Shown: one piece after another, positions 4,401 to 22,665 of the stretch
Position numbering within the stretch: the stretch's first letter is position 1
Layout: the number at the start of each line of letters is the position of its first letter
NCBI GenBank assembly: GCA_002269645.1
Contig: NIVC01000815.1
Span: forward strand, 1 to 64,000
DNA length: 64,000 bases
Reading direction: 5' to 3'
From: Macrostomum lignano
Lineage: Eukaryota
The notes under the pieces: generated by a model
What the model was told of the DNA's origin: nothing
The model's database searches: none
Seen by the model: only the letters and a program-made list of their open reading frames with translations
Made by a program: the position numbers and the translations under genes

Positions 4401-7400
4401 TTTTCTAGAGTTTTTTCAGGCATATTCCATGTTTTTGTACATGCTTCTAGGAATTCTATATCAGCAAAAAAACATCCCTTGGTAAAAATTCACCATAAAC
4501 TAAGTGTCTAGCACTTTCAAGCATTGCTTGATATAAGGAGCATTGGCATGTATATATTGTCTAGCAAAAATGCTAAATTTATAATAAATTGAGCAGAATT
4601 TATAAAAAGTGTCCACAAACTTCTACCATTAAGCAGAGTACTACAGATATTTGTACTATGCTAAACATATGAAGAAATAAAAAGAATACTTACTTCAAAA
4701 CTAAAGTCTTAAGTCAAAATTATGCAAACAAAAGGAAAATTCAAGTTAAATTTGACTGATAACTACAAAATAAAATGTGAAAGGATGAGTACTTTTAAAA
4801 GATATATGTAAATATGACTATAATTTATAAAAATATGGAGCAAAAAGCAAAGCAGAGAAAAAAAACGTAAATATTTGGCAGAATACAATTAATTAGCTAT
4901 AAAATAATATTAAAGTACTATACTTCAGTTATATTTCAAATAAAATTTGAAGCTTACACTTACAGTGTAAAACTGATAACAATTGAATATATTACAATTA
5001 AAACTTGTACTTGTAGAATATAATATATTGTACAATAATTATATATAATGTAGTAGGATACGAATAAATAGCGTAACAAAACCGAATATTATAGCTACAG
5101 ATTGAAGCTTGAAAATATTTCAGATTTAGATAGCGTTTGCTTAGATAAGTTGCTTTGAAAATTTGGGGTCAAATTTGTCCTACAGCAATAAACTACTGTT
5201 AACATAACCGATTTAAATTTAAATTTTTGTAGAAATTATAAGGAACAGAACGACTGAAATGTACAGTTTAATTATTTCAAAATTAAATAATTTCGAATTC
5301 TATTTTACCTTATTGCTTTCTTCAATTAAATTTTGTTATACAATTTATAAAATGCCTATTTTCAAAATATACCTCAAAAAGTAAGTTCAACAGCTTTAAA
5401 AATGCGCACGTTTTTACACTTCACGGCTCCAAAAAGTCACCATAGAAGATTTTTGCAGGACGCAAGACTTTTTACGTTACAAAATAGCACTTTTATGTGC
5501 ATTTTTTATTCAGTTTCAAAAGGCTTTTTAGTTACCTATTTGGTATTTTTTGTTTTAAAGATTTTTGCGAAATCAGGTCATTTTAACTTGTTACGAAACT
5601 GTGGACCCACACTTTTACGCAACGCAATGCGCATGATGTCATCTTAAAGCACTTGCTAAATGCTATTTATTGACACTACACTGAAGGCCTGGCGTAGGAT
5701 AGTTAATAAATGGCAGCGTGAAATATAGCAAAAAAACGCATAGTACCGGAACCTCGTAATTCGGTAAAATGTTAATAGCGTCAAAATACGAATTTTCGCA
5801 CACTAACGAAGATGGCAGTCATCTGTACGTGTTTACTGGGCACAATAGTGCTCTTGGAAGCTAAGAACCTCATAGCGAAAATTAATATATTTTCCGCCCT
5901 ATGTAGTGCTCAAATGGGTTGTTTTTGCACAAAATCACGTTTTTCGATTTTGAGAGTCAATTAAAAATTTTTTTTGCAACTGACAGACGTGAATGTCACT
6001 TTTTCTGAGAGTATTCATCTAGATGTTTCTAATAAGTACTAATATGGGTCATTCTTATGCTTCACCTATCCTTAGTATAGGTACAAAGTCATTATTTCAT
6101 TTCCAGCAAGTCACGTGACCTGGCCTGAGGTGTACAACGCATCGTGCAATGCCAGCGAACATACACTCAAATTAAAGCACTTTTTAAATGCTAACTATTG
6201 ACACCACACTGAAGGCCTGGCGTAGCATCGTTAATAAATGGCAGCGTGAAATATAGCAAAAAAACGCATAACACCGGAACCTCGTAATTCGGTAAATGTT
6301 ATTAGCGTAAAAATACGAATTTTCGCACACTAACGAAGATAGCAGTCATCTGTACGTGTTTACTGGGCACAATAGTGCTCTTGGAAGCTAAGAACCTCAT
6401 AGCGAAAATCAATAAATTTTTCACCCTATGTGTGCTCATATAGGTTGTTTTTGCACAAAATCACGTTTTTCGATTTTAAAAGTCAATTATAACAAAATTT
6501 TGCAACTGACAGACGTGAATATCATTTTTTCTGACAGTAGTCATCTAGGTGTTTCTAATAAGTACAAATTTTGGTTCATTCTTACGCTTCACCTATCCTT
6601 AGTATAGGTACAAAGTCATTATTTCATTTCCAGCAAGTCACGTGACCTGACCTGAGGTGTACAACGCATCGTGCAATGACAGCGAACATACATTCAAATT
6701 AAAGTACATCTAAAATGTAGTTCAATGACACCAAGCGCGTCGCGCTCCGGTAATCCGCTCAAAAGTTACAGGCTAAAAAGTATGTTCGATATGCAAGCCC
6801 CCCGTACCGTCGTTAAAGTACATTTCTGTACCGGCAGCGACTTCAATAAACTAAGACGAAATTTCAAAATATACATATTGTGCGCAATTTAGTTGTGCAC
6901 CTTGCCTAAAAAGTCTGATTTTCCTAGCATGTCGTCGTTTCTTATTTTTTGTACATTTGTATCATGAAAAATACATAAAAATAGCCTAAATCACGTTTAT
7001 CGACTTTAGCAGTGTATGGCTCAGAGTCAGTGCAACGAAACGGCTCAAAATGTATTATAAACATGTAGATCTTACCTAAATGACCGCATTCATGTACTTT
7101 TTAGAGTCTCGCAACAAGGTTGAATTTCCTTTATTTCGGTTCGAATACCTACCCGTCGAATATTCGAATGTAATTAACAGGTGCGAATGTACAGTTAAAG
7201 TGAGTATCTTGGTTAAAGTCGTGCGTCATGTAAGAGTCCCAGGTGCCATTGTTAGAATGACGCAGCTCAAAGGTCGCGCTGACGCGCGACCTTTGAGCTG
7301 CGTCAGTTGAAAGTTGATAAAAATGCGCATTTTTTGACACTTAAAAAACACACTTTTACAGAATTACCTATCAAGGTAAGCATTTAGCGGAAAATAACCA

Positions 7401-10400
7401 ATCAGTGTCTTGAAGGTCTGAAAATTCGCCAAAAGTTGGGTTCAATCAATTTTTGACTCCATATTGTGAATCCTTATTTTTTGAGATTCAAGATTTGGAC
7501 GGGTCTAAAAAAAGTCACTTTTTTGTTGCCATGGCAACCAAGACGCGTTGCTATGGAACTTTCACGTCACACATCTTGTAGCCCTAAATGTTTTACGTCC
7601 ATAGAGGGGTCACACATGGTTTCATCTCAAGTGGTTTTAACTCTGCATCAATTTTATTTTCTAAAACGTTGATTTTACGTTGGGGGAGTCTCCGGGACAT
7701 CTTATCTCGGTCTCGTTTGTTAGAAAAAAAAATTTTCTAGAGTTTTTTCAGGCATATTCCATGTTTTTGTACATGCTTCTAGGAATTCTATATCAGCAAA
7801 AAAACATCCCTTGGTAAAAATTCACCATAAACTAAGTGTCTAGCACTTTCAAGCATTGCTTGATATAAGGAGCATTGGCATGTATATATTGTCTAGCAAA
7901 AATGCTAAATTTATAATAAATTGAGCAGAATTTATAAAAAGTGTCCACAAACTTCTACCATTAAGCAGAGTACTACAGATATTTGTACTATGCTAAACAT
8001 ATGAAGAAATAAAAAGAATACTTACTTCAAAACTAAAGTCTTAAGTCAAAATTATGCAAACAAAAGGAAAATTCAAGTTAAATTTGACTGATAACTACAA
8101 AATAAAATGTGAAAGGATGAGTACTTTTAAAAGATATATGTAAATATGACTATAATTTATAAAAATATGGAGCAAAAAGCAAAGCAGAGAAAAAAAACGT
8201 AAATATTTGGCAGAATACAATTAATTAGCTATAAAATAATATTAAAGTACTATACTTCAGTTATATTTCAAATAAAATTTGAAGCTTACACTTACAGTGT
8301 AAAACTGATAACAATTGAATATATTACAATTAAAACTTGTACTTGTAGAATATAATATATTGTACAATAATTATATATAATGTAGTAGGATACGAATAAA
8401 TAGCGTAACAAAACCGAATATTATAGCTACAGATTGAAGCTTGAAAATATTTCAGATTTAGATAGCGTTTGCTTAGATAAGTTGCTTTGAAAATTTGGGG
8501 TCAAATTTGTCCTACAGCAATAAACTACTGTTAACATAACCGATTTAAATTTAAATTTTTGTAGAAATTATAAGGAACAGAACGACTGAAATGTACAGTT
8601 TAATTATTTCAAAATTAAATAATTTCGAATTCTATTTTACCTTATTGCTTTCTTCAATTAAATTTTGTTATACAATTTATAAAATGCCTATTTTCAAAAT
8701 ATACCTCAAAAAGTAAGTTCAACAGCTTTAAAAATGCGCACGTTTTTACACTTCACGGCTCCAAAAAGTCACCATAGAAGATTTTTGCAGGACGCAAGAC
8801 TTTTTACGTTACAAAATAGCACTTTTATGTGCATTTTTTATTCAGTTTCAAAAGGCTTTTTAGTTACCTATTTGGTATTTTTTGTTTTAAAGATTTTTGC
8901 GAAATCAGGTCATTTTAACTTGTTACGAAACTGTGGACCCACACTTTTACGCAACGCAATGCGCATGATGTCATCTTAAAGCACTTGCTAAATGCTATTT
9001 ATTGACACTACACTGAAGGCCTGGCGTAGGATAGTTAATAAATGGCAGCGTGAAATATAGCAAAAAAACGCATAGTACCGGAACCTCGTAATTCGGTAAA
9101 ATGTTAATAGCGTCAAAATACGAATTTTCGCACACTAACGAAGATGGCAGTCATCTGTACGTGTTTACTGGGCACAATAGTGCTCTTGGAAGCTAAGAAC
9201 CTCATAGCGAAAATTAATATATTTTCCGCCCTATGTAGTGCTCAAATGGGTTGTTTTTGCACAAAATCACGTTTTTCGATTTTGAGAGTCAATTAAAAAT
9301 TTTTTTTGCAACTGACAGACGTGAATGTCACTTTTTCTGAGAGTATTCATCTAGATGTTTCTAATAAGTACTAATATGGGTCATTCTTATGCTTCACCTA
9401 TCCTTAGTATAGGTACAAAGTCATTATTTCATTTCCAGCAAGTCACGTGACCTGGCCTGAGGTGTACAACGCATCGTGCAATGCCAGCGAACATACACTC
9501 AAATTAAAGCACTTTTTAAATGCTAACTATTGACACCACACTGAAGGCCTGGCGTAGCATCGTTAATAAATGGCAGCGTGAAATATAGCAAAAAAACGCA
9601 TAACACCGGAACCTCGTAATTCGGTAAATGTTATTAGCGTAAAAATACGAATTTTCGCACACTAACGAAGATAGCAGTCATCTGTACGTGTTTACTGGGC
9701 ACAATAGTGCTCTTGGAAGCTAAGAACCTCATAGCGAAAATCAATAAATTTTTCACCCTATGTGTGCTCATATAGGTTGTTTTTGCACAAAATCACGTTT
9801 TTCGATTTTAAAAGTCAATTATAACAAAATTTTGCAACTGACAGACGTGAATATCATTTTTTCTGACAGTAGTCATCTAGGTGTTTCTAATAAGTACAAA
9901 TTTTGGTTCATTCTTACGCTTCACCTATCCTTAGTATAGGTACAAAGTCATTATTTCATTTCCAGCAAGTCACGTGACCTGACCTGAGGTGTACAACGCA
10001 TCGTGCAATGACAGCGAACATACATTCAAATTAAAGTACATCTAAAATGTAGTTCAATGACACCAAGCGCGTCGCGCTCCGGTAATCCGCTCAAAAGTTA
10101 CAGGCTAAAAAGTATGTTCGATATGCAAGCCCCCCGTACCGTCGTTAAAGTACATTTCTGTACCGGCAGCGACTTCAATAAACTAAGACGAAATTTCAAA
10201 ATATACATATTGTGCGCAATTTAGTTGTGCACCTTGCCTAAAAAGTCTGATTTTCCTAGCATGTCGTCGTTTCTTATTTTTTGTACATTTGTATCATGAA
10301 AAATACATAAAAATAGCCTAAATCACGTTTATCGACTTTAGCAGTGTATGGCTCAGAGTCAGTGCAACGAAACGGCTCAAAATGTATTATAAACATGTAG

Positions 10401-11052
10401 ATCTTACCTAAATGACCGCATTCATGTACTTTTTAGAGTCTCGCAACAAGGTTGAATTTCCTTTATTTCGGTTCGAATACCTACCCGTCGAATATTCGAA
10501 TGTAATTAACAGGTGCGAATGTACAGTTAAAGTGAGTATCTTGGTTAAAGTCGTGCGTCATGTAAGAGTCCCAGGTGCCATTGTTAGAATGACGCAGCTC
10601 AAAGGTCGCGCTGACGCGCGACCTTTGAGCTGCGTCAGTTGAAAGTTGATAAAAATGCGCATTTTTTGACACTTAAAAAACACACTTTTACAGAATTACC
10701 TATCAAGGTAAGCATTTAGCGGAAAATAACCAATCAGTGTCTTGAAGGTCTGAAAATTCGCCAAAAGTTGGGTTCAATCAATTTTTGACTCCATATTGTG
10801 AATCCTTATTTTTTGAGATTCAAGATTTGGACGGGTCTAAAAAAAGTCACTTTTTTGTTGCCATGGCAACCAAGACGCGTTGCTATGGAACTTTCACGTC
10901 ACACATCTTGTAGCCCTAAATGTTTTACGTCCATAGAGGGGTCACACATGGTTTCATCTCAAGTGGTTTTAACTCTGCATCAATTTTATTTTCTAAAACG
11001 TTGATTTTACGTTGGGGGAGTCTCCGGGACATCTTATCTCGGTCTCGTTTGT
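4401..11052. repeat. Tandem duplication of a 3,332-bp AT-rich unit (4401-7720 and 7733-11052), each with an internal ~530-bp imperfect duplication and a 22-bp perfect hairpin
   Basis: Four small ORFs recur with identical translation at an exact offset of 3332 (5402/8734, 7080/10412, 7149/10481, 7466/10798). 12-nt spacer TAGAAAAAAAAA at the junction. Internal repeat ctgaaggcctggcgtag at 5681 and 6209. Hairpin at 7258-7305 and 10590-10637. Confidence 0.95.
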
Positions 11053-11123
11053 CCGAAAAAATTGCCAACGAGGAGCTACGCTCGCTTCGCTCGCTTCGCT
11101 CCTCGTTGGCAATTTTTCCGGAC
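11051..11123. other. Inverted repeat/hairpin (20-bp perfect stem, extendable) with GCTCGCTTC repeats in the loop; possible rolling-circle element terminus
   Basis: aaaaattgccaacgaggagc (11057-11076) is the exact reverse complement of gctcctcgttggcaattttt (11098-11117). It lies exactly between the 3.3-kb duplication and the LINE 5' end. Confidence 0.7.
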
Positions 11124-11334
11124 TGCACTTCGACCTAACTAGCCTAGCTTAGCTCTTAAAAGTACTTTAGTTAGCCTTCCATTCCACTGTACATTTGTTT
11201 TTATCTCTACCCCACCCCTAGTCTTATCTTGCAGTCGCCCCACCCCTCTCAGCGAGCGCACTTTGTGTGCCTCCTGACTCATTAGTAGTTGTCTAGTTTA
11301 GTTTAGTGTGAGTGCACCCAAATAATCACGCCAT

Positions 11335-14058
11335 ATGGCTGCGAATCGCGCCAGCGCTAAAAAGATGGACTGCCGGCCCTCTCTCGAGCACCGGTATCGT
11401 CCGAACGAAGCCTACGGTCGCCAGCTTCTTGGACTGACGCCGACAGCTGAGCCATCGACTGCGAGCCCGCCGCCAGCAGGCCAGATGCGAGCTCGACGCA
11501 GTCTGGACGGCCGCCACTCGATCAGCCCGCCGGCCGGCGAGCTCTTGCGCAACGCAGAGGAGATCCTGCGAGAGAATGAGCAGCTGCCGGAGGCTGCAGG
11601 CGCAGAGGCAGAGCAGCGCATGTCTCTCGACTGCGACGAGCCAGGCCAGACAAGCGCCCTGCCATCCAACGAGGCCGCAGCAACCACCGAGCCACCAACT
11701 GTCGAGTCCAGCGAGCTCGGTGCGGCAGCGGCAGCGCCGACGTCTGAGGAGCGCCAGCAATCGGCTGCAGACCAGGCCTCGACGCTGCCAAAGCCCCCTG
11801 CCGAGCAACTGGACGCTGACATCAGTCAAATCATCTTCCCTGATGAGCCTGACTTGACTGACTGTCAGCAGACGATCTACGCCAGCGACAGCACCATCAT
11901 CTATGCGCCCAAGTTCCTGAGCGAGGTCGCGGACCAAGTCTACGAGCGCCTGATCACCGACCTGCTGCCTCTGGCCTTTCAGCATCGTCCGAGTGAGCAG
12001 CGCCGTGTCTACTGGATCGGCCCGTCGTACACCCACAGCGGGGTTGAGCTGAAGGAAAATCTAGACTGGCATCAGGTAATTGAAGACATTCGTGACTTCA
12101 TTTACCATGATACCCAGTTCGATGTCCCGAAGTTCAACTCCGTGTTGGTGAACTTCTACACCGAGCCGGGAGACCGGATTCCCTGGCACTCGGACGATGA
12201 GGATGAGCTCGGCGACAGGCCGACGATCGCGACCGTGTCCTTCGGCGCTGAGCGGCTGTTCATGCTGCGCCGTCGGGACGGCAACGTGACGCACCGCTTT
12301 CCAACGCTGCCAGGCTCGCTGATTCTGATGGCAGGAAACTGCCAGAAACGCCTGCAGCACCAGGTGCCCGCCGCCCACTCTCAGAATGGCGTCCGCATCT
12401 CGCTAACATTCCGTGTCACCAAGCCGGAGCTGCGGCGCAAGCGAGCTCTGCCGGATGACCCGACCTACAGCCAGCCGCTCAACGGCGGCCCATTCGGCGA
12501 CGACCAAGGCGGTCGGGACGACGACCAAGGCGGCCACGACGACGACCAGGGCGGCCGGGGCGACGACAGGCCCCAGGAGCGGCAGGCGACGGCGACGCGA
12601 GACCGCGAAGGCGATCGGGGTCGGCGCGGCCGTGGCGGCCACCAGCGAGGCAGGCGAGGAGGTCCCGGCGCGGCGTCCGGTGCGGCGGCGGCTTCGGCGG
12701 CTTCCTGGCCGGCCGGTGCGGCAGCGGCTTCGACGACAAGCGCGCAGGCGGCTGCGGCAGCGCGGCCCTACGCGCAGGTTGCGGCGCGCCCTGCGCCGCC
12801 CAGAAGGCCCCAGGCTGCCATCCCGCCGATCGTTTTTGAGGTGCACCGGGACGCGGCCAACAAGCTGATGCAGTTCGTTGCCTGGCTGCAGACCAACTTT
12901 GCCGGCGAAGCTCGAGCCGTCAACACTGCGCCGATGGCGAATCAGCCGGCCTATCTCGTGTTCCCAGCGTCGGAGCGGGACTACAACGTCTTCCTGGGCG
13001 GCGCGCTGCGCGAGGAGAAGCTGCTCGAGCATCCCGTAAAGCGCCGTCCAGCCCGAGCCCGACCGCTGGACAACAGAACAGGGCCCGACAGAGTGCAGCA
13101 GCAGCCGGTACGCACCTTCGTCGCTACTGAGGTGCCCCTCGCATTCTCGGAGGCTGACTTCGCGACCCTGTTGCGCGACACGCTCAAGCTGGACATTGTC
13201 AGCGTCCACAGAATCCGAGCCAGAGCGACTGGGAAGGCAACCCAGTTCGTGCGCATCTTCACAAAGTCGGCGATGACCTACGAGAAGTGCCTCCGCGATG
13301 GCATCTGCACCGACTTCTTGAAGTTCAACTGCGAGGACAGCCGCACAGACGAGCCGGTCCGCGCTCTGCAATGCCAGCGCTGCCAGGAGTTCGGCCACCG
13401 CGCTGCCCAGTGTCGGGGGCAGCAGCGTTGCCGGATTTGCGGCGGCCAGCATTCCTGGAAGGAGTGCCAGCACGAGGGCCCAGCGGTCTGCGCCAACTGC
13501 GGCGGCTCGCACCGAACCACCAGTCGAGCCTGCACCGTCGCCAAGGCGGAGCACGACAAGGCGACCAGAGCGGCTGCTGAGGCCAAAGCCGCGGCGCGAG
13601 CTGCGGAAGCTGCGGCCGCTGCTGCCCCAGTGTCAAGTGAGACCGACGACGCCGCCGTCGACGACGACTCCGACAGCGGCTGGCTGATCCGCCGAGGCAG
13701 GCGCACGGTGCCGGTACCCGCCGCGATCCGGCCGCTTGTCATCGTGACCGATGATGCCAGGAGCGCTCCGGCGGCAGAGACCGAGTCTGCAGCAGCTGCC
13801 AGCGCTGATGTCAATGCGACTGCTCCGTCAGCTGATGCCGGCCAGGCGGTGCAGCTGCAGCTTAGTGACTTTATGTCGGTGGTGAGCATGCTGTTGCCCC
13901 TGATCACCCGCTCTCTGACTCAAGTGGTTGTGCAGGCCCTGTCCCGACCGCCTGGGGAGGTCCTCACTGTGGAATCAACCAGTAAAATGGTTGAGGACAT
14001 TGTGCGGGCTGCACTCCAGGAAGTGCCGGGCATGGCCGGCGCGACCACTGAGTCCTAG
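11335..14058 (+). CDS. LINE ORF1 (907 aa): N-terminal low-complexity region, AlkB/ALKBH2-3-like 2OG-Fe(II) dioxygenase (about aa 186-362), Gly/Arg/Ala linker, RRM-like region, three CCHC zinc knuckles
   Basis: Uninterrupted ORF. AlkB motifs: FNSVLVNFY, WHSDDE (HxD, H285/D287), IATVSFGAERLF, GSLILMAG, QHQVP (H342), RISLTFR (R354/R360). Knuckles CQRCQEFGHRAAQC, CRICGGQHSWKEC, CANCGGSHRTTSRAC at 13372-13533. Confidence 0.93.
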   Translation: MAANRASAKKMDCRPSLEHRYRPNEAYGRQLLGLTPTAEPSTASPPPAGQMRARRSLDGRHSISPPAGELLRNAEEILRENEQLPEAAGAEAEQRMSLDCDEPGQTSALPSNEAAATTEPPTVESSELGAAAAAPTSEERQQSAADQASTLPKPPAEQLDADISQIIFPDEPDLTDCQQTIYASDSTIIYAPKFLSEVADQVYERLITDLLPLAFQHRPSEQRRVYWIGPSYTHSGVELKENLDWHQVIEDIRDFIYHDTQFDVPKFNSVLVNFYTEPGDRIPWHSDDEDELGDRPTIATVSFGAERLFMLRRRDGNVTHRFPTLPGSLILMAGNCQKRLQHQVPAAHSQNGVRISLTFRVTKPELRRKRALPDDPTYSQPLNGGPFGDDQGGRDDDQGGHDDDQGGRGDDRPQERQATATRDREGDRGRRGRGGHQRGRRGGPGAASGAAAASAASWPAGAAAASTTSAQAAAAARPYAQVAARPAPPRRPQAAIPPIVFEVHRDAANKLMQFVAWLQTNFAGEARAVNTAPMANQPAYLVFPASERDYNVFLGGALREEKLLEHPVKRRPARARPLDNRTGPDRVQQQPVRTFVATEVPLAFSEADFATLLRDTLKLDIVSVHRIRARATGKATQFVRIFTKSAMTYEKCLRDGICTDFLKFNCEDSRTDEPVRALQCQRCQEFGHRAAQCRGQQRCRICGGQHSWKECQHEGPAVCANCGGSHRTTSRACTVAKAEHDKATRAAAEAKAAARAAEAAAAAAPVSSETDDAAVDDDSDSGWLIRRGRRTVPVPAAIRPLVIVTDDARSAPAAETESAAAASADVNATAPSADAGQAVQLQLSDFMSVVSMLLPLITRSLTQVVVQALSRPPGEVLTVESTSKMVEDIVRAALQEVPGMAGATTES

Positions 14059-14144
14059 TCTCAGGCAGCTAAACTCAAGACTTGAATTGAAACTTCAGTG
14101 CGTTAACTGTAGACTCAAACAATCAAACCACAGCCCTGAAGATT

Positions 14145-16921
14145 ATGCACCTAAACTGCAGGGGATTCAACCCGAAAATCAGAGAGCTGACACAGTGGGT
14201 CGTCAGTCAGGAGCTAGACATTGCCCTCTTCTCTGAGACCATTCTCAAAAGCTGTCACACTGTCCAGATTCCCGGGTACTCCATCATTCGGTATGATACC
14301 CCGCATGTAAAACGCGGGCTGCTCCTTGCTCACTCTCCTCGCGTCAAACTCACAAATGTGCGCTTGCAGTATGACAATGTCAACCATGAAGCCATCTCCT
14401 GCACCGTGAGCTTGTCTGACAACTCTGGTCCTGACTTCAATCTCGCTCTGGTGTACAGGTCTCCAGCACCGTACCACCTGAACCTGAACCTACTCAAAAA
14501 TCTTCTCTCCCGTAGGCGCAGTGTGCTCATGGGTGACCTCAATGCTAGACACCGCTTCCTCGGGGTGACAGCAGCAACAACATGGCTGGCTACCAGCTGC
14601 ACGACTGGCTGTCTGAGGGTCCCACTCGCCCACCATACTCAATCAGGCCGGTCAGTTCACCAGACTGGCCACCAAAAACGGGCTGATTTCTAGGAATGTC
14701 TTGGACCTCGCCCTGGCCACTGAGGACTTTCTCCCATTTGTGCAGGACTTTGAGGTGGGTCCTGACCTGGGCAGTGACCACTTACCTATAATCCTCACGC
14801 TCAATATTCAGTCGAAGAAATGGGCTGGTCCCCCAGACCCAAAAACTTCTCAAAAACAAACTGGGACGAGTTCAGACTCAAAATCAGTGAAGCTTTGAGC
14901 TCAGATCAGAATATTAAATTATCAAATGCTGACCAAATCAATGCCGAAGTGGATCACATCACAAAGGCCATTCACACCGTGATTGACTCCACAGTACCAG
15001 ACTGTGGTGCCAAAAACGCCCTACCCAAGTACATCCTCGACCTGATCAAAGAGCGCAGACGACTCAGACGCCTCTTCTTCAGCACACGGGATCAAAATTT
15101 CAAAACCCAAGCAAACCAGCTCGCAAATCGCATAAAGAGAGAAATTAGCGCCTTCCAGAATGGAAAGCTCACCAAAGTCTGTGAGAGTATTGTTGAAAAC
15201 AGCAAGAACAAGAAAGTGAAGAATTTCTGGCACGACACTAAAAAGCTGATGGGCAAATTTAAGCCAACCTCCATCCCCAGCCTCACCCTGGGTCAAACAA
15301 CTGCGCACACAGATCTGGAGAAGGCTAACCTTCTAGCCGAGACTCTGGACTCAAAGATGCGCCCAGTCCCTTCCACATGCGAACAGCTCAAACGTGAGGT
15401 GGCCGATGTGGCACAGCTCACCTCATTCTACCCCGTTCCTGAGGGAATCGAACCCATCGAGACCCACCCACTTGATGCTGCATTCTCTGTGGCAGACACA
15501 GTGTGGGAACTGGAGCACCTCAGGCCTGATGGAGCACCCGGGCTAGACAAGATTCCCAACTGCGTCCTCAAGCTGGGCTTAGAGGGGGTGGCAATCACGA
15601 GACTCACTAACCTCTTCAACGCCTGCTACGGTCGAGGGATTTTCCCCAGCGCCTGGAAGAAAGCTGTGGTGACAATGATCCCCAAGCCGGACAAACCGCC
15701 CGAACACCCCAACTCCTACAGACCAATCAGCCTGACCTCATGTCTGGGCAAAGTGTTTGAGAAGCTTATAGCAAAAAGACTCACCAAGCACCTTGAGGAT
15801 AATAAGACCCTAGGAGATGACCAATGCGCCTACCGCAAAATTCACTCCACGTATGACAACCTGTGCCGTCTGGCACAAGATGTCATGGTAGCAAAGTGCA
15901 AAGCTAAAAAGTCCGCTGCAGTCTTCCTGGATGCAGAGGCAGCTTTTGACTCCACCTGGCACGACAAGATCAGGCATAGCATGCTCACTGATGGTTTTCC
16001 ACCTATGCTCATGCGAATCCTGTCTGACTACCTGCGAGACAGACAGATCCAGGTTCGAATCGAGGGGGCCCTAAGCGATCCCCACACCATCCAGGCTGGC
16101 GTCCCTCAGGGAGGCATTCTGAGCCCTCTCCTGTACCTCCTCTTCGTCAGCTCAATGCCGACTCCCACCATCTCAAGCGTCAAACGCAGTCAATTCGCAG
16201 ACGACATGGCCGTCTGGGCCTCAGCAGACACCTTTGCGGGGCTCCGAACATCCCTTCAAAGCTACCTCAGACGAGTCTTTGACTGGTGCGGTAAACAGGG
16301 CATTAGACTGAATGCCGGGAAAAGCAAAGCAATCGCTTTCAACTACAAACCCACTAGGCGCATGGACTTGCGACCCAAACTGTATCTGGGGGACACTGAG
16401 GTTCCGTACTGTCAGGAGGTGAAATTCCTGGGTGTCCTCCTTGACCAGAGCCTCTGCCTGAACAAACATGTGGACAACATGGCAGATACCAGCAGAGCCA
16501 TTGTAATGTCACTGTGCAGAATTGCAAAAATGACTAAGCTGAGTAGCACCACCCTCAGAATGCTGTACAGGGCATACGGAGAAAGCGCTCTCACCTATGG
16601 AGCGCCAATCCTGAGCCAAATTTGTGCGACTAACCAAATCAAATTGCAAAAATTCAAAACCTGGCTCTCCGTATCTGCTATGGTGTGCCATCCTACATCA
16701 GCATTGAATACCTGCACAAGCTGGCAGGTATGCCGATGCTCGCAGACAGAGTCAAGCAGCTGGGGGTGGCTTGGCTGCTCAAGATGAGGGCAGCCAAGCT
16801 CCACAGCTTCCACATTGAGCCGGAAGCCCCTCGGGCTCCGGGCCGAACCCCCGTCCTCAATGTCCTCTGGGATGCCATGAGGCGTCGGGAAAGAAACAGG
16901 GGAATCCCACCCCAGGGTTAG
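14145..16921 (+). CDS. LINE ORF2: APE endonuclease plus reverse transcriptase, no RNase H; four 1-nt frameshifts in this assembly
   Basis: APE motifs HLNCRG, FSET, MGDLNARH, DLAL, SDHLPI. RT motifs APGLDKIP, YRPISLTS, FLDAEAAFD, GVPQGGILSPLLY, QFADD, VKFLGV. Frames rejoin by adding one base at G-run 14562-14565, C-run 14621-14623, C-run 14830-14834 and A-run 16648-16652. Confidence 0.92.
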
Positions 16922-17599
16922 GCTGGCTACCAGCCTTCCAACCGAAGTGACCACGCTCTGAAACGCAACTAATAAAACTAAACTTGCTGCCTGAGACAGA
17001 GATCGGTTGATCAGTCATTAGGACTGATTTTGTGACCTCTGGTCTCCTCGCGCTTCTTTTTACAATTTTTTCCAACTGTGTTTTTTACCCAACTGTCTTA
17101 CAAATATTCCTAATAGCTTTTTACGCCTTTACTATATTCATTCTATTTTTACAACTTAATTCAAATATGCGCTATTGCATTTTTAATCTCTATTTTTTAC
17201 TCATATGCCTCTTTTTTTAATAGGCCTTCAAATATTCTAGAACATATTTTTAGATCTCCTGTATTTATTAGATCCCTTCTTTGTGCGGGATTTCCCTCCC
17301 CTCTTTTTTATCCCCAAATGCGTGCAAAATTCTGCAAAATATTGAAAAATAGTTTTTATATATGTATATTTTTAATTTCAATATTCGTATAAATTTTCAA
17401 ATCGAAATCTGTAAATATTTTTAATTCTTTCGATCAAATACAAAATATAACTGCGGCAGAGTTCTTCGGAACTGACCCGCGCCGGTTTCGACGGCACCTC
17501 GTTTTAACAACAACAAAGATTTCCGTGGAGGGATACTCTTAGGAGAATTCTCTAGTTTTTGCAGGCCTTTCCTAGAAAGGCTTATTGGTTATGGAATAG

Positions 17600-19215
17600 T
17601 AATAGCCTTAGCCTTAGCTCTTTCTTTAAGTACTTAGTTAGCCACGGCTCACTCCCACTGTACATTTGTTTTTATCTCTACCCCACCCCTAGTCTTATCT
17701 TGCAGTCGCCCCACCCCCTCAGCGAGTGCACTTTGTGTGCCTACTGACTCATTAGTTAGTTGTAGTTTAGTTTTAGTTCGTGTGAACCAGAAGTCACGCC
17801 ATATGTCTGCGAATCGCACCAGCGCTAAAAAGATGGACTGCCGGCCCTCTCTCGAGCACCGGTATCGTCCGAACTCGAGACGGAGTCCGAACTCGGCTAC
17901 GGTCGCCAGCTTCTTAGACTGACGCCGACAGCAGAGCCATCGTCTGCGAGCCCGCCGCCAGCAGGCCAGATGCGAGCTCGACGCAGTCTGGAAGGCCGCC
18001 ACTCGATCAGCCCGCCGGCCGGCGAGCTCTTGCGCAACGCAGAAGAAGTTCTGCGAGAGAATGAGCAGCTGCCGGAAGCTGCAGGCGCAGAGGCAGAGCA
18101 GCGCATGTCTCTCGACTGCGACGAGCCAAGCCAGACAAGCGCCCTGCCATCCAACGAGGCCGCAGCAACCACCGAGCCACCAACTGCCGAGACCAGCCAG
18201 CTCAGTGCGGCAACGGCAGCGCCGACGTCTGAGGAGCGCCAGCAATCGGTTGCAGACCAGGCCTCGACGCTGCCAAAGCCGCCTGCCGAGCAACTGGACG
18301 CTGACATCAGTCAAATCATCTTCCCTGATGAGCCTGACTTGACTGACTGTCAGCAGACGATCTACGCCAGCGACAGCACCATCATCTATGCGCCCAAGTT
18401 TCTGAGCGAGGTCGCGGACCAAGTCTACGAGCGCCTGATCACCGACCTGCTGCCTCTGGCCTTTCAGCATCGTCCGAGTGAGCAGCGCCGTGTCTACTGG
18501 ATCGGCCCGTCGTACACCCACAGCGGGGTTGAGCTGAAGGAAAATCTAGACTGGCATCAGGTAATTGAAGACATTCGTGACTTCATTTACCATGATACCC
18601 AGTTCGATGTCCCGAAGTTCAACTCCGTGTTGGTGAACTTCTACACCGAGCCGGGAGACCGGATTCCCTGGCACTCGGATGATGAGGACGAGCTCGGCGA
18701 CAGGCCGACGATCGCGACCGTGTCCTTCGGCGCTGAGCGGCTGTTCATGCTGCGCCGTCGGGACGGCAACGTGACGCACCGCTTTCCAACGCTGCCAGGC
18801 TCGCTGATTCTGATGGCAGGAAACTGCCAGAAACGCCTGCAGCACCAGGTGCCCGCCGCCCACTCTCAGAATGGCGTCCGCATCTCGCTAACATTCCGTG
18901 TCACCAAGCCGGAGCTGCGGCGCAAGCGAGCTCTGCCGGATGACCCGACCTACAGCCAGCCGCTCAACGGCGGCCCATTCGGCGACGACCAAGGCGGCAA
19001 GGACGATGACTGGCCTCGGGGGCAGCAGGCGACGCGAGACTCATACAATTGTATCCAGCACGTATTTGTTTAGATTTCCTCATTTTTATCAGACCCCTTC
19101 TGTGTGCAGTATTTGTCCACTTTTTCAAACTCCAAATGTATGCAAAGAAATTCCAAATATTGAAAAATAGTTTTATTTATTTAAACTTTTATTTCAATAT
19201 TCTTTCAATATCTAA
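17600..19215 (+). mobile_element. Internally deleted second copy of the AlkB-LINE: 5'UTR, ORF1 N-terminus plus complete AlkB domain, then 3'UTR-like sequence
   Basis: 5'UTR homologous to 11140-11334. ATG at 17803, an insertion/frameshift near 17870-17890, ORF 17970-19073 with AlkB identical in protein to copy 1. Homology to ORF1 stops near 19041 and switches to sequence resembling 17270-17400. Confidence 0.9.
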
Positions 19216-19224
19216 ATCGAATGC

Positions 19225-20330
19225 AGGCCTCAGGCTGCCATCCCGCCGGTGGTTTTCAAAGTGTAACAGGTCGCGGCCAACAAGCTGGTGCCCTATATTG
19301 TCTGGCTGCTAGTACAGGCAAATTTTTTGCTGGTGAAGCCGCGGCGTCAACACTGCGCAGATGGCGAATCAGCCGGCCTACCTCGTATTGCCGGCGTCGG
19401 GGCAAGACTACAATGTCTTCCTGGGCGGCGCGCTGCGTGAGGAAAAGCTGCTTGAACATCCGTCCAGAGCCCGACCGCTGGATAACCCATACAGGGCCCG
19501 ACAGAGTCCAGCAGCAGCCAGTCATCACATTTGTCACACCTGACGTGCCTTTCGAGATCTCAGAGGCGACCCTCTGCTCTGTAGGATGCCATAAGGCTTC
19601 GGGAAAGAAACAGGGGATTCCTAATCCAAGGTTAGGCTGGTCGACAGTCTCCCAGACCCGAAGTGAGCACGCGCTGAAATGCATTAAAAAGACTATTTAT
19701 GCTGCCTGAGCCAGAGAGATCGGATGATAGGACCCTTGTATGATCTGCAATCTCCCTGTGAAAATTTACTTTATTCAAACTATTTGTATTCTTTGACAGC
19801 TTTTACAAATACCCCTGGCTGTTTTTATACCAATGATATACTACCTATAAAATTTTATCTGAACATGCGCTCTGGCGTTTGATTTCATTTTTTACTCAAT
19901 AGCCTCTTTTTGCCTTTAACAGGCTCTTAAAAATCCAGCACGCATTTTTTAGATTTCCTTATTTTTATCACCTGTAAATATTTAAATTCTTTCGATTAAA
20001 TAAAACAATAATACAGCGGCAGAGTTCTTCCGAACAGATATGTACCCGTTTTTACGGCACCTCGTTTTAACAACGATTTCCGTGAAGAGGAACATTCAAA
20101 TTCAAAGAGTGTTCCCTGATTTGTGAAACCCCTTCCAAGAAATTGTACTAATGAAGCAAAAACATTGCTTGTCAATTCCCTCTAGAGCGTGATCGCAAGC
20201 CCATAGGACGCACGCAACACCAATTTCAAGTGTTTAAGTGTGCGGCGGAGTTTTTCGGAACTGATCTACGCTAAGTTTTTACGGCACCTCGTTTTAACAA
20301 AGATTTCCGTGATGAGGTACTCTCAACGAG
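19225..20330 (+). mobile_element. Diverged, internally deleted AlkB-LINE fragment: mid-ORF1 piece fused to ORF2 tail and 3'UTR, plus a second 3'-end repeat
   Basis: 19225-19545 aligns to about 12805-13140 (MANQPAYLV..YNVFLGGALREEKLLEHP). 19585 onward aligns to 16870 onward. The terminal motif acggcacctcgttttaacaa..gatttccgtg occurs at about 17492, 20034 and 20281. Confidence 0.85.
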
Positions 20331-20389
20331 AATTACATGTACTCTGATTTGTGCAACCCTTACAAAGGGTACAATAGACTTTGAATAGT

Positions 20390-21500
20390 TTAGCTCTATC
20401 TCAAAGTACATACGCTAGCCCCTCCGTCCATTCCACTGTACATTTATTTCCCCACTCTTCTAGTTTTATCTTGTAGTCGCCCCACTTCTTAGTGAGCGGA
20501 TTTTGTGTGCCTCCTGACCCTTAGAGTTAGTGTTTTAGTTCGAGTGTACCAAAAAGAAATCACGCCATATGGCTGCGAAGCGGATCGCAGAAGCCGAGGT
20601 CCAGGCTGGCCTCGACGCCGTGACCGAGTGGTGCGCCTCCCGCAAGCTCGCCCTTAATCCTACCAAGAGCGAGGCTGCCTTTTTCTCCATCTACCCGGTG
20701 AAGGCAAAATGGTCCCCGCGTCTTAGCCTCGGCCAAGCCCCACTCAAGCGCAATCTCACGCCGCGGCTGCTCGGCCTTACTTACGATCGGATCCTCACCT
20801 TCAGCACGCACACGGAAGGAGTTTGCAGGAAGGTGCATTCGCGCAATCGCATGCTGGTCTGCCTCGCCGCGCGCGATTGGGAATGGCAGAAAGACGCCCT
20901 CAAGCGCACTTTTATCGCCATGCAACGGAGTATCATGCTGTACGCCGACCCCGCCTGTCACCCTTGGCTAGACGGCACCACTTTTGAGAAGCTCCAACGT
21001 TCGCAAAACGCCGCTCCCCGAATCATCGCTCAACGCCGATTGAAGCGCTGCGCATCGAGGCCAGTTTTTGCTTTGCTCTTTCTGTACCACAAGCGACATG
21101 GCGACTGGTCAGGTCAACCACCGCTCGGCCAGAGGCGGCACGCTTCCAACCTGCTCGCCACTTTGCCACCGGAGCGATAGTTGCGCGAACCACTTGACAC
21201 CCGCTCTGCCTCCTCCCGCCCCGCCATCGTCAGCATCTATTGCGACGGCTCCGCCACTGAGGGCACCACCAACGGCGGTTTCTCTGTGGTCATCTGCACG
21301 GGTGACCCCCCCCCCCAAGTGGTGTGGCACATCTCTGCCCCCGGGCGCGCTCTCACCAGCTCCTTCAATGAGAAGCTCGCCGCTCCCCGTTGCGCTCTCC
21401 ATTGGCTCGCTTCTGGTGCCCACTCTCAGTCGCTGCTCCGCGCGCTCCAGAGCCCTACCTGTCGTATTTGGCCTACTCTCCTTCTGCCGCAATGCCAGTC
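20390..21500 (+). mobile_element. Chimera: third AlkB-LINE 5'UTR and start codons joined to a 5'-truncated, degenerate RT C-terminus plus RNase H of an unrelated I/Ingi-like LINE
   Basis: The 5'UTR and tcacgccatATGGCTGCGAA match copy 1 up to about 20579. Then EWCASRKLALNPTKSE, LLGLTYDRILTFSTH and RNase H IYCDGSATEGTTNGG follow, with an in-frame TAG at 21178-21180 and frameshifts. Confidence 0.75.
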
Positions 21501-22319: not shown

Positions 22320-22665
22320 TCTGCACCAGGCGACTAGCAAGCTGGTGGATCGAGAATGTACCAAGACGGACAATGACGGAGACTTGAGGATCAAAGGCCA
22401 CAGGAGAGACCTCGCGTTAGTGCCAGAACCTCGCGTTAAAGACCTTCGCGTAAAAAATATCCCACCAGTTCGGTTTCAGTGCAGCCGACTGGGGCAGCCG
22501 AAAGTTCTGTTCGTCGAGTAAATAAGGAACAATGACTTTAAAGGGCAGATGGTATAGATGATGAGATACCGTATTTATATCTATGGCCCTGACCCAAAGC
22601 CTACGTGCTTGGCCCGCTATCAGAGCAGCCCAAGATGCAATAGGTATAACACTGTACACAATTAC

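What the first reader, a model, noticed from the sequence alone, without database searches (positions are those of the whole stretch)
11335..16921. LINE retrotransposon whose ORF1 carries an intact AlkB-family oxidative demethylase
Seen: one 907-aa ORF fuses an ALKBH2/3-like domain (11890-12420; HxD at H285/D287, distal H342, 2OG-binding R354/R360, NFY motif) to a gag-like RRM plus triple-CCHC region. It sits directly upstream of an APE-RT ORF2 and between element UTRs that recur in neighbouring copies. The domain is intronless, unlike host genes here. Established: AlkB enzymes reverse m1A/m3C (and, in some clades, m6A) on ssDNA/RNA. Several plant RNA viruses (e.g. Betaflexiviridae, Closteroviridae) carry AlkB in their replicase. 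LINE ORF1p coats its own RNA in cis. Inference: this element may tether a demethylase to its RNP to erase RT-blocking or host-imposed RNA methylation, or to repair the ssDNA intermediate of target-primed reverse transcription, as a counter-defence. I cannot establish novelty without a search.
Basis: partly seen in the sequence, partly recalled or inferred. Interest (0 to 1): 0.92.

Follow-up and report, generated by a model that had tools for sequence, protein, structure and literature searches.

The report
Flatworm LINE carrying an AlkB demethylase
A family of jumping genes (LINE retrotransposons) in the flatworm Macrostomum lignano has built a complete, conserved AlkB-type nucleic-acid demethylase/repair enzyme into its RNA-binding coat protein. 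No such fusion turned up in the literature I could search, and it suggests that base methylation of the template is a real obstacle to retrotransposition.

Summary
Window 11335-14058 (+) is one intact 907-aa ORF. It contains a complete ALKBH3/ALKBH2-type AlkB domain (aa 166-372) with all iron and 2-oxoglutarate ligands. After a low-complexity linker come two RRM folds, three CCHC knuckles and a helical tail. An APE+RT ORF2 follows 86 nt downstream, broken in this copy by 3-4 single-base frameshifts.

The host is Macrostomum lignano. The fusion is not a one-locus accident:
- About 98%-identical copies lie at two other M. lignano loci.
- At least three other lineages share the architecture at 25-31% ORF1 identity. 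One is a naturally intact full element whose ORF2 is 39% identical.
- All keep the catalytic residues.
- Within the family, pN/pS in the AlkB segment is 0.18.

80 environmental relatives of the RRM-CCHC module lack AlkB, so this is a restricted, old lineage. The likely donor is a host intron-containing ALKBH2/3-like gene, though this is unresolved.

The fold points to repair of m1A/m3C-type lesions on single strands, not ALKBH5/FTO-type m6A erasure. The function itself is inferred.

No prior description was found. I rate it a new variant of a known kind, of high interest.

The parts
11138..17518 (+). LINE copy A: 5' UTR, ORF1, ORF2, 3' UTR and tail. It is 5'-truncated by about 85 nt relative to array-internal units.
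   Evidence: Self- and cross-locus blastn: 97-98% identical full-length copies at L004:5751-12130 and L005:9799-16250. Junction alignment.
11138..11334 (+). 5' UTR
   Evidence: Recurs at 17603-17800 and 20386-20582, and in L004 and L005.
11335..14058 (+). ORF1, 907 aa, intact
11335..11829 (+). ORF1 N-terminal region (aa 1-165): A/E/P/S-rich, no recognisable domain, evolving nearly neutrally
   Evidence: No Pfam hit at E<=10. Composition. pN/pS 0.64.
11830..12450 (+). AlkB (Fe(II)/2OG dioxygenase) domain, aa 166-372. Iron ligands: H285 (12187-12189), D287 (12193-12195), H342 (12358-12360). 2OG ligands: R354 (12394-12396), R360 (12412-12414). N273-x-Y275 is also present.
   Evidence: Pfam E 1.6e-20. 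PDB ALKBH3 E 1e-21. AlphaFold model pLDDT 87.6. Foldseek TM 0.81-0.86 to ALKBH3 over about 200 columns. Residues conserved in all fused lineages.
12451..12819 (+). Low-complexity D/G/R/A-rich linker. It includes a 21-nt tandem repeat (12498-12567, 3.3 copies) that encodes DDQGG repeats.
12829..13338 (+). Two RRM-fold domains (aa 499-572 and 593-668) separated by a disordered spacer
   Evidence: Model pLDDT 83 with beta-alpha-beta-beta-alpha-beta topology twice. Foldseek top hits are all tandem-RRM proteins, E 4.5e-7 and weaker.
13372..13533 (+). Three CCHC zinc knuckles (aa 680-693, 699-711, 719-733)
   Evidence: Pattern search. All Cys/His invariant across lineages. Pfam zf-CCHC sub-threshold, E 0.0015.
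13540..14055 (+). ORF1 C-terminal tail: an A-rich segment followed by a terminal helical segment that aligns across lineages
   Evidence: Alignment A2, columns about 1190-1290. No Pfam hit.
14145..16911 (+). ORF2 (APE endonuclease + reverse transcriptase, no RNase H). In this copy it is interrupted by single-base frameshifts near 14561, 14624, 14829 and 16648.
   Evidence: Exo_endo_phos E 6e-6 and RVT_1 E 6.5e-37 (RT core 15678-16436). Three-frame translation. Each break is unbroken in at least one other copy. 39% identical over 619 aa to the intact ORF2 of L001.
16912..17518 (+). AT-rich 3' UTR ending in a variable (AAC)n-AAAG tail (17506-17518). Small stem-loops are predicted just upstream of the tail but have no covariation support.
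   Evidence: Tail length varies between copies. Fold.
17519..19728 (+). Copy B, head-to-tail with copy A. Order of parts: conserved 12-mer ATTTCCGTGGAG, 5' leader, 5' UTR, an AlkB-containing ORF (17970-19073, 367 aa), then internally deleted and mosaic remains of the RRM region and 3' UTR.
   Evidence: 94.6% identity to 11140-12525, then 77-78% fragments. AlkB segment 100% identical at the protein level, with 3 synonymous differences.
20241..20582 (+). 5' leader/UTR fragment of a third, more diverged unit in the same array
   Evidence: 69-75% identity to 17452-17816 and 11145-11348.

Best explanation
What it is (shown): a member of a multi-copy family of APE-type non-LTR (LINE) retrotransposons of Macrostomum lignano. 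Its ORF1 protein is a Type-I ORF1p (two RRMs plus three CCHC knuckles) that acquired an N-terminal, complete AlkB-family Fe(II)/2-oxoglutarate dioxygenase domain of the ALKBH2/ALKBH3 kind.

The acquisition is old and has been kept by selection. At least four lineages share the same domain order and every catalytic residue, at only 25-31% ORF1 identity and 39% ORF2 identity.

How it most likely works (inferred):
1. ORF1p coats the element's own single-stranded RNA in cis.
2. This places many copies of the dioxygenase on the template.
3. The enzyme oxidatively removes methyl groups from the Watson-Crick face (1-methyladenine, 3-methylcytosine). These lesions arise on single-stranded nucleic acid and stop or derail reverse transcriptase.
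4. Because one such lesion on a 6.4-kb template would abort target-primed reverse transcription, in-cis repair of the RNA raises the yield of full-length, competent copies. Repair may also extend to the exposed ssDNA at the integration site or the nascent cDNA.

The likely source of the domain is a processed copy of a host ALKBH2/3-like mRNA.

My probabilities:
- Real, selected AlkB-ORF1p LINE family: about 0.95.
- Domain catalytically active: about 0.8.
- Main substrate is m1A/m3C-type lesions on the element's own RNA or ssDNA: about 0.5.

The single confidence figure given for this explanation (0.6) is for identity and mechanism taken together.
For: Architecture and residues.

Multi-copy in M. 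lignano.

Same architecture in divergent lineages, with ORF2 downstream:
- P0041-P0047.
- L001, a full element with intact ORF1 and intact APE+RT ORF2.
- L003.
- Alignment showing HxD, H and R..R conserved in all.
- ORF2 co-divergence, 39% over 619 aa.

Purifying selection within the family: pN/pS is 0.18 for AlkB (7 synonymous, 4 non-synonymous), 0.11 for the RRMs and 0 for the knuckles. It is 0.64 for the N-terminus and 1.1 for the tail. Copy A versus copy B in the AlkB segment shows 3 synonymous and 0 non-synonymous changes.

Single origin: in domain-only phmmer, the other TE lineages always rank first, ahead of 139 free-standing AlkBs drawn from 1.84 billion proteins. The NJ point estimate gives an exclusive clade.

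Substrate class:
- Foldseek best matches are ALKBH3 bound to ssDNA/3mC (TM 0.81-0.86) and ALKBH2. FTO is only rank 50 and ALKBH5 is absent from the top 50.
- The hairpin that carries the duplex-intercalating finger in ALKBH2-type enzymes is shortened in all TE forms.

Precedent for the logic: AlkB domains of plant RNA viruses repair m1A/m3C and prefer RNA (PMC2553587).

Established knowledge (not tested here): m1A and m3C block or derail reverse transcriptases, and ORF1p binds its own RNA in cis.
Against: - No enzymatic, expression or retrotransposition data exist. Substrate and benefit are inferred from fold similarity only.
- The copy in the window has a frame-broken ORF2, and the two other full-length copies have single-base breaks in both ORFs. 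Current activity of this family is therefore unproven. Some breaks may be long-read homopolymer errors.
- Bootstrap support for monophyly of TE-borne AlkBs is weak in a crude NJ analysis, 4-12 of 100.
- The pN/pS figures rest on few substitutions.
- ALKBH3-type enzymes have also been reported to act on other marks, so m6A or tRNA-type substrates are not excluded.
Confidence: 0.6

Rival explanations
1. The domain is an RNA m6A eraser. It would strip a host-deposited regulatory or restrictive mark from the element's transcript as an epitranscriptomic counter-defence, as proposed for the ALKBH5-like ORF of orchid Ty3/Gypsy elements.
For: An AlkB-family domain in a retrotransposon has been shown to demethylate m6A in vitro in orchids (PMC9289625). 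AlkB-family substrate range cannot be read reliably from sequence.
Against: - The fold and sequence are ALKBH3/ALKBH2-type. FTO is only a distant structural match (TM 0.63) and ALKBH5 is not in the top 50.
- The abstract of PMC7873242 reports that m6A promotes human L1 retrotransposition and that ALKBH5 suppresses it. An eraser is therefore not obviously beneficial to a LINE.
Confidence: 0.15
2. The enzyme acts mainly on DNA rather than on the element's RNA. It would repair alkylated bases in the single-stranded target DNA or nascent cDNA during target-primed reverse transcription, or more generally at the integration site.
For: The closest structures are ALKBH3 cross-linked to ssDNA and ALKBH2 on DNA. 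ORF1p of LINEs is a nucleic-acid chaperone present at integration (established knowledge).
Against: - The ALKBH2-type duplex-intercalating hairpin is shortened, which argues against dsDNA.
- The domain is fused to an RNA-coating protein, not to ORF2p, which sits at the DNA.
- Viral AlkBs in an analogous position prefer RNA (PMC2553587).
This rival overlaps with the best explanation and is not exclusive of it.
Confidence: 0.2
3. The AlkB fold is retained as a non-catalytic nucleic-acid-binding or scaffolding module of ORF1p, or it acts on a non-nucleic-acid substrate.
For: No activity data exist. Some AlkB homologues have non-canonical roles.
Against: The complete iron triad, both 2OG-binding arginines and the N-x-Y motif are conserved in every full-length lineage despite 32-43% domain identity. 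That pattern is expected for catalysis, not for mere binding.
Confidence: 0.08
4. The fusion is an artefact: an assembly chimera, or a dead LINE that landed next to or captured a host exon at this one locus.
For: The ORF2 of this copy is frame-broken. M. lignano assemblies are repeat-rich.
Against: - The same junctions recur at about 98% identity in two other contigs of an independent assembly.
- The same architecture recurs in independent SRA assemblies at 25-31% identity, with ORF2 downstream.
- The host AlkB genes are distinct, intron-containing loci.
Confidence: 0.01

Closest known systems
Type I LINE ORF1p (RRM + CCHC; Khazina & Weichenrieder classification, as summarised in PMC4120745), Jockey/CR1/L2-group elements
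   Same: - Bicistronic APE-type LINE.
- ORF1p has RRM fold(s) immediately upstream of CCHC knuckles with the spacing series X4/X4, X3/X4, X3/X6.
- No RNase H in ORF2.
- The closest AlkB-less ORF1 relatives carry PRE_C2HC and Exo_endo_phos_2/RVT_1, in a pseudoscorpion and in environmental contigs.
   Different: - ORF1p is about twice the usual length because of a 495-aa N-terminal extension that contains a complete AlkB dioxygenase.
- None of 80 environmental relatives of the RRM-CCHC module has AlkB.
- As far as I read the 448-element Jockey-superfamily survey, its domain list covers only CCHC, RRM, PHD, esterase, coiled coil, CTD and a zinc-finger/leucine-zipper domain.
Esterase- or PHD-containing ORF1p of CR1/L2 LINEs (Type III/IV ORF1p)
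   Same: It is a precedent that LINE ORF1 is modular and can carry an accessory, even enzymatic, domain acquired by domain shuffling (PMC4120745; PMC3905857 title and abstract).
   Different: The enzyme class and presumed substrate differ: lipids or chromatin there, methylated nucleobases here.
AlkB domains in replicase polyproteins of plant RNA viruses (Flexiviridae and relatives)
   Same: A selfish genetic element with a single-stranded RNA genome or template carries its own AlkB. That AlkB has been shown to repair m1A/m3C with a preference for RNA (PMC2553587). The functional logic is the closest to the one proposed here.
   Different: - Those are RNA viruses of plants, not a retrotransposon of an animal.
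- The AlkB is embedded in the replicase, not in the coat or chaperone protein.
- The acquisition is independent.
ALKBH5-like ORF of giant Ty3/Gypsy (Ogre/Tat-like) LTR retrotransposons of Phalaenopsis orchids
   Same: It is a retrotransposon-encoded AlkB-family dioxygenase, experimentally an RNA-binding demethylase (PMC9289625).
   Different: - It is an LTR element in plants.
- The AlkB lies in a separate extra ORF, not fused to the RNA-binding gag-like protein.
- It belongs to the ALKBH5-like m6A-eraser subgroup, whereas this one is ALKBH2/3-like.
- That acquisition is recent; this one is old and diversified.
Human ALKBH3 / ALKBH2 and the M. lignano host AlkB genes (P0205/P0061, P0068)
   Same: - Same fold over the whole catalytic domain (TM 0.81-0.86).
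- Identical iron and 2OG ligands.
- The host gene P0205 is about 40% identical to the TE domains and shares the short W.GP-Y.Y loop.
   Different: - The TE domain is intronless and fused to ORF1p.
- It lacks the conserved W.Q...FGK hairpin signature.
- The host genes have an intron inside the domain and different N-terminal partners: an RS-rich region in one and C2H2 fingers in the other.

Membership tests
AlkB family Fe(II)/2OG dioxygenases | Match to the family profile above the curated threshold | tested here: met
   PF13532: 74.6 bits against a cut-off of 31.2, E 1.6e-20.
AlkB family Fe(II)/2OG dioxygenases | HxD...H iron-binding triad | tested here: met
   H285, D287 and H342. Aligned with ALKBH3 WHSDDE and QHRVP. 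Conserved in all fused lineages.
AlkB family Fe(II)/2OG dioxygenases | 2-oxoglutarate ligands (Rx5R and N-x-Y) | tested here: met
   R354, R360 and N273/Y275. R354 and R360 are invariant in alignment A2.
AlkB family Fe(II)/2OG dioxygenases | Complete double-stranded beta-helix fold with the N-terminal nucleotide-recognition extension | tested here: met
   Model pLDDT 87.6. About 200 aligned columns, TM 0.81-0.86 to ALKBH3 and 0.80 to ALKBH2.
AlkB family Fe(II)/2OG dioxygenases | Fe(II)/2OG-dependent oxidative demethylation activity | not testable with these tools
   Needs biochemistry.
ALKBH2-type dsDNA repair enzymes | Long beta-hairpin with a hydrophobic finger (the ...FGK... signature in the alignment) that intercalates into duplex DNA | tested here: not met
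   The segment is shortened (29-34 residues against a median of 37) and the W.Q...FGK signature is absent in all TE forms.
ALKBH5/FTO-type m6A erasers | Closest structural or sequence similarity to ALKBH5 or FTO | tested here: not met
   FTO ranks 50 with TM 0.63. ALKBH5 is not in the top 50. The PDB sequence search returns only ALKBH3 and ALKBH2.
APE-type non-LTR (LINE) retrotransposon | ORF2 with an N-terminal APE-like endonuclease followed by a non-LTR-type reverse transcriptase | tested here: met
   - Exo_endo_phos scores 26.6 bits (cut-off 24.5) and RVT_1 scores E 6.5e-37.
- The best PDB matches are LINE-1 ORF2p and R2 proteins.
- In this copy the frame is broken at 3-4 places.
APE-type non-LTR (LINE) retrotransposon | Multiple genomic copies with variable 5' truncation or internal deletion, no LTRs, and a simple-repeat or A-rich 3' tail | tested here: met
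   - Copies in the window, L004 and L005.
- One copy retains only the 3'-terminal ~590 nt (L005:9126-9720, matching window 16942-17530).
- Copy A lacks about 85 nt at its 5' end.
- The (AAC)n-AAAG tail varies in length.
APE-type non-LTR (LINE) retrotransposon | Target-site duplications flanking individual insertions | tested here: inconclusive
   Copies lie head-to-tail. The 12-mer ATTTCCGTGGAG occurs at every junction and at both ends of the L004 array. It could be a TSD or reused target, or the conserved 5' end of the element.
Type I ORF1p | At least one RRM immediately upstream of CCHC zinc knuckle(s) | tested here: met
   Two RRM folds followed by three CCHC knuckles.
Jockey superfamily/group (Jockey, CR1, L2, Rex1 ...) | Placement by RT (or APE+RT) phylogeny with reference elements | not tested
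- Indirect hints only: no RNase H, Exo_endo_phos_2 in relatives, and PRE_C2HC in the nearest AlkB-less ORF1 relatives.
- The non-poly(A) tail is unlike Jockey proper.

The most novel reading that the evidence does not exclude
Retroelements of two unrelated classes in flatworm-type hosts carry the same clade of captured AlkB and use it in cis to strip RT-blocking base methylation from their RNA templates. The two classes are this LINE lineage and a Penelope-like element (L086). This would mean that methylation of RNA bases, whether chemical damage or a host-imposed mark, is a quantitatively important natural barrier to retrotransposition that elements can evolve to overcome.
Probability: 0.3. 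Interest if true: 0.88.

Novelty: new variant of a known kind. Interest (0 to 1): 0.76.

Why it matters
LINE ORF1 proteins are regarded as RNA-binding chaperones with few accessory activities (esterase, PHD). A nucleic-acid repair/demethylase domain conserved across deeply diverged lineages of a LINE would be the first case I could find of a non-LTR retrotransposon carrying its own template-maintenance enzyme.

It parallels the AlkB of plant RNA viruses and the m6A eraser of orchid Gypsy elements. The three cases would be independent solutions by selfish RNA-based replicators. Together they argue that the methylation state of the template matters for their fitness.

It also gives a directly testable system:
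- M. lignano is a transgenic-capable laboratory model.
- The domain is small and can be expressed.
- Catalytic-dead mutants are obvious (H285A/D287A).

Practically, a compact ALKBH3-like enzyme naturally fused to an RNA-coating module might interest people who use AlkB treatment to improve reverse transcription through modified RNA.

Tried and rejected
The AlkB domain alone found only free-standing AlkBs and missed the M. lignano copies. The RRM-CCHC profile found only 11 proteins. The exhaustive HMMER search was what revealed the fused relatives.
- Exact look-ups of the window's own ORFs found no record.
- An Rfam scan of the window found nothing.
- I tried to prove a single capture by NJ bootstrap. 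Support was only 4-12 of 100 on about 195 columns (one search timed out). I rely instead on reciprocal domain-only ranking and shared architecture, and I say so.
- RT clade placement failed. PDB hits do not discriminate, since L1 and R2 score equally. The Jockey-superfamily paper's supplements hold no sequences.
- I could not identify the organisms behind the Logan samples (SRR31628392/403/434, SRR19430222). The literature search on the accession prefix was uninformative.
- The 3' UTR stem-loops are predicted but have no covariation support.
- I considered a bacterial donor, because the best word-indexed hits were Pseudoalteromonas and Psychrosphaera AlkBs. I downgraded it because the host P0205 is as close as or closer than these and shares a loop deletion with the TE forms.
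- I did not build a full-length consensus or mended element. Breaks are reported gene by gene.


Full report
**1. The observation**

Window 11335-14058 (+) is a single 907-aa ORF starting at ATG.
- Pfam places a 2OG-FeII_Oxy_2 (AlkB-type) domain at aa 223-360: E 1.6e-20, 74.6 bits against a 31.2-bit cut-off.
- The best solved relatives are human ALKBH3 (E 1e-21) and ALKBH2 (E 1e-13).
Three CCHC knuckles lie at aa 680-693, 699-711 and 719-733.
- An AlphaFold model of aa 165-372 is confident (pLDDT 87.6, pTM 0.86). It superposes on the whole catalytic domain of ALKBH3 (TM 0.81-0.86, about 200 columns) and ALKBH2 (0.80). E. coli AlkB (0.68) and FTO (0.63, rank 50) are much further away, and ALKBH5 is not in the top 50.

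The domain is therefore complete, not a fragment, and belongs to the ALKBH2/3 structural group.

**2. The rest of ORF1**

- The N-terminal 165 aa and the linker at aa 373-495 are low-complexity and hit no family. The linker contains a 21-nt tandem repeat at 12498-12567.
- A model of aa 496-741, built on an alignment of six lineages, has pLDDT 83. It shows two consecutive beta-alpha-beta-beta-alpha-beta domains (aa 499-572 and 593-668) followed by the knuckles.
- Every top Foldseek hit is a tandem-RRM protein aligned over both domains: Pub1, HuR, nucleolin, hnRNP A1.

This is the 'Type I' ORF1p organisation, RRM immediately upstream of CCHC, as summarised in PMC4120745.

**3. ORF2 and element boundaries**

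- ORF2 begins at 14145, 86 nt after the ORF1 stop. It has an APE endonuclease (Exo_endo_phos, above threshold) and a reverse transcriptase (RVT_1, E 6.5e-37). No RNase H is present.
- Its best PDB matches are LINE-1 ORF2p and R2 proteins.
- In this copy the frame shifts near 14561, 14624, 14829 and 16648. All are single-base indels, mostly in C/G runs. Each is unbroken in at least one other copy of about 98% identity. They may be real lesions or long-read assembly errors; I cannot tell which.
- The element does not stop at 16921. A 3' UTR of about 600 nt, AT-rich, runs to a tail (AAC)3AAAG at 17506-17518. The tail's repeat number varies between copies.
- The unit starts at 11138 in this copy, about 85 nt short of the 5' end seen in array-internal units.

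**4. Host and copies**

Near-identical proteins are annotated in Macrostomum lignano only as 'hypothetical' or 'Fe2OG dioxygenase domain-containing'.
- Two contigs of assembly GCA_002269645.1 carry full-length copies 97-98% identical to the window's, plus truncated and internally deleted ones.
- The window itself has a second, internally deleted copy at 17519-19728. Its AlkB segment is 100% identical in protein, with three synonymous differences. Its N-terminal 165 codons differ at 16 non-synonymous and 7 synonymous sites.
- Pooling all copies, pN/pS by segment is:

| Segment | pN/pS |
|---|---|
| AlkB | 0.18 |
| RRMs | 0.11 |
| Knuckles | 0 |
| Linker | 0.25 |
| N-terminus | 0.64 |
| C-tail | 1.1 |

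Counts are small (7 synonymous and 4 non-synonymous in AlkB). The pattern is nonetheless that of a domain selected during the family's spread.

**5. The fusion is a lineage, not a locus**

An exhaustive HMMER search of 1.84 billion representatives with the whole ORF1 returned divergent long proteins that match both halves. These are P0041 to P0047, of 436-962 aa.
P0041-P0044 come from SRA (Logan) assemblies of unidentified organisms.
- L001 (9 kb) is a naturally intact full element. It has an AlkB-ORF1 of 843 aa, a small unexplained 123-aa ORF, then a 948-aa APE+RT ORF2.
- L003 shows the same with another lineage.
- The window's RT is 39% identical to L001's over 619 aa (E 9e-158). ORF1 and ORF2 have therefore co-diverged.
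- In the alignment of nine proteins the order is conserved: AlkB, linker, RRM-RRM, three knuckles, terminal helix. Every full-length member keeps HxD, the distal His, both Arg and N-x-Y, at 24-31% overall identity.

This is the strongest evidence that the enzyme is functional for the element.

**6. How restricted is it?**

- A scan of JGI metagenome contigs with the RRM-CCHC profile gave 80 LINE-ORF1-like loci. None encodes an AlkB domain.
- In 63 of them the ORF is closed upstream within the contig, with at most 264 residues ahead of the module. The window has 495.
- The closest named AlkB-less relatives are PRE_C2HC-bearing elements of a pseudoscorpion.

The AlkB extension is thus a derived feature of one lineage.

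**7. Origin of the domain**

- In an NJ tree of 153 AlkB domains the TE-borne ones form an exclusive clade, but bootstrap support is weak, 4-12 of 100.
- A more robust indicator is domain-only phmmer. For each TE lineage, the other TE lineages are the top hits, ahead of all 139 free-standing AlkBs.
- Among the nearest non-TE proteins are two M. lignano host genes. P0205/P0061 has an RS-rich N-terminus plus AlkB. P0068 has C2H2 fingers plus AlkB. Both have an intron inside the AlkB domain.
- P0205 is about 40% identical to the TE domains. That is as close as the TE lineages are to each other (32-43%) and closer than the bacterial AlkBs (28-36%).
- Both host genes share with the TE forms a 3-4-residue deletion in the W.G...Y.Y loop relative to bacterial enzymes.

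I therefore favour capture of a processed host ALKBH2/3-like mRNA, once, before the lineages split. This is not proven.

**8. Mechanism**

Shown:
- A complete ALKBH2/3-type catalytic domain is covalently joined to the element's RNA-coating protein.
- It has been conserved over deep divergence.

Inferred:
- ORF1p binds the element's RNA in cis (established for LINEs).
- AlkB enzymes of this group remove 1-methyladenine and 3-methylcytosine from single-stranded DNA and RNA (established).
- These lesions block or derail reverse transcriptases (established; it is why AlkB treatment is used in tRNA sequencing).
- Coating a 6.4-kb template with the repair enzyme should therefore raise the proportion of full-length cDNA.
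- The hairpin that carries the duplex-intercalating finger in ALKBH2-type enzymes is shortened in all TE forms. This fits single-stranded substrates.
- The nearest functional precedent is the AlkB of plant RNA viruses, which repairs m1A/m3C and prefers RNA (PMC2553587).

The m6A-eraser reading has a precedent in orchid Gypsy elements (PMC9289625). It is less likely here because the fold is not ALKBH5/FTO-like. In addition, m6A is reported to favour human L1 (PMC7873242 abstract). It is not excluded.

**9. Comparison with the known, and novelty**

LINE ORF1 modularity and accessory domains are known: PHD and esterase. AlkB capture by RNA viruses and by one plant LTR-retrotransposon lineage is also known.
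- Five full-text searches found no description of an AlkB domain in a non-LTR retrotransposon or a Penelope-like element.
- As far as I read the 2014 survey of 448 Jockey-superfamily ORF1s, its domain list has no dioxygenase.
- Repbase and Dfam could not be searched.

I classify this as a new variant of a known kind.

**10. Limits**

- There are no activity or expression data.
- The RT clade was not placed by phylogeny.
- The organisms of the SRA-derived lineages are unknown.
- Single capture and the host donor rest on modest evidence.
- Current mobility of the family is unproven, since every full-length copy examined has at least one frame break somewhere. ORF1 is intact in the window copy, and both ORFs are intact in L001.

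Noticed in passing
L086:2120-7398 (Logan SRR19430222): A 1012-aa ORF carries an AlkB domain of the same clade as the LINE-borne ones (it ranks with them in domain-only phmmer). It is followed by an ORF with RVT_1 (E 0.0026), then GIY-YIG (E 0.0029), plus precomputed DUF8422 and HTH_animal hits. That is a Penelope-like-element layout. If real, the same AlkB clade serves two unrelated retroelement classes.
   Followed up: partly
window 11138-20582; L004:1171-12130; L005:9126-16547: The AlkB-LINE copies always lie head-to-tail. They include independently truncated, deleted or diverged units. The junction is conserved: variable (AAC)n-AAAG tail, then ATTTCCGTGGAG, then the 5' leader. The 12-mer also flanks both ends of the L004 array. 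This suggests repeated insertion at the same sequence (site-specific, or targeting its own ends) rather than simple tandem duplication.
   Followed up: partly
L001:4346-4717 and L002:3167-3538: A conserved 123-aa ORF with no Pfam match sits between ORF1 and ORF2 in the P0042 lineage and overlaps the ORF2 start by 8 nt. The window's family has no such ORF; its spacer is 86 nt.
   Followed up: no
window 6669-7729 and 10001-11061; 11051-11123: A 1061-bp direct repeat, 99.8% identical, whose second copy abuts the LINE array. Immediately after it lies a 73-nt near-perfect palindrome (ccgaaaaaattgccaacgaggagc...gctcctcgttggcaatttttccgg), just upstream of the LINE's truncated 5' end.
   Followed up: no
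window 17970-19073: The internally deleted copy B retains an open 367-aa frame that is essentially N-terminal region plus intact AlkB domain, with no RRM or CCHC. Its deletion breakpoint lies in the 21-nt DDQGG repeat of the linker (about 12525). It could encode a free-standing TE-derived AlkB.
   Followed up: partly
window 22417-25575 (-): Exons of a host SLC4-type bicarbonate transporter gene (HCO3_cotransp, E 1.7e-34 and 1e-9), split by introns. This confirms that host genes here are intron-containing.
   Followed up: no
window 14-2751 (-): Two overlapping long ORFs. The first has DUF6570 (E 2.4e-19), a domain usually found with Helitron-type helicases, so this is probably a Helitron remnant.
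   Followed up: no
window 46152-48002 (-) and 40893-41753 (+): A 616-aa ORF with a BTB/POZ domain (E 2e-8). Separately, a 286-aa ORF with repeated DUF6470-like matches and odd weak hits that look compositional. The window also has stretches of extreme GC and AT skew at 28-34 kb and 50-54 kb.
   Followed up: no
L087:6001-9148 and L088:5001-8068 (M. lignano): The host has at least two AlkB2/3-like genes with unusual N-terminal partners: C2H2 zinc fingers in P0068 and an RS-rich, proline-rich region in P0205. Each has an intron within the AlkB domain. P0068 has N in place of the second D of the HSDDE motif and I in place of N in the N-x-Y motif.
   Followed up: partly
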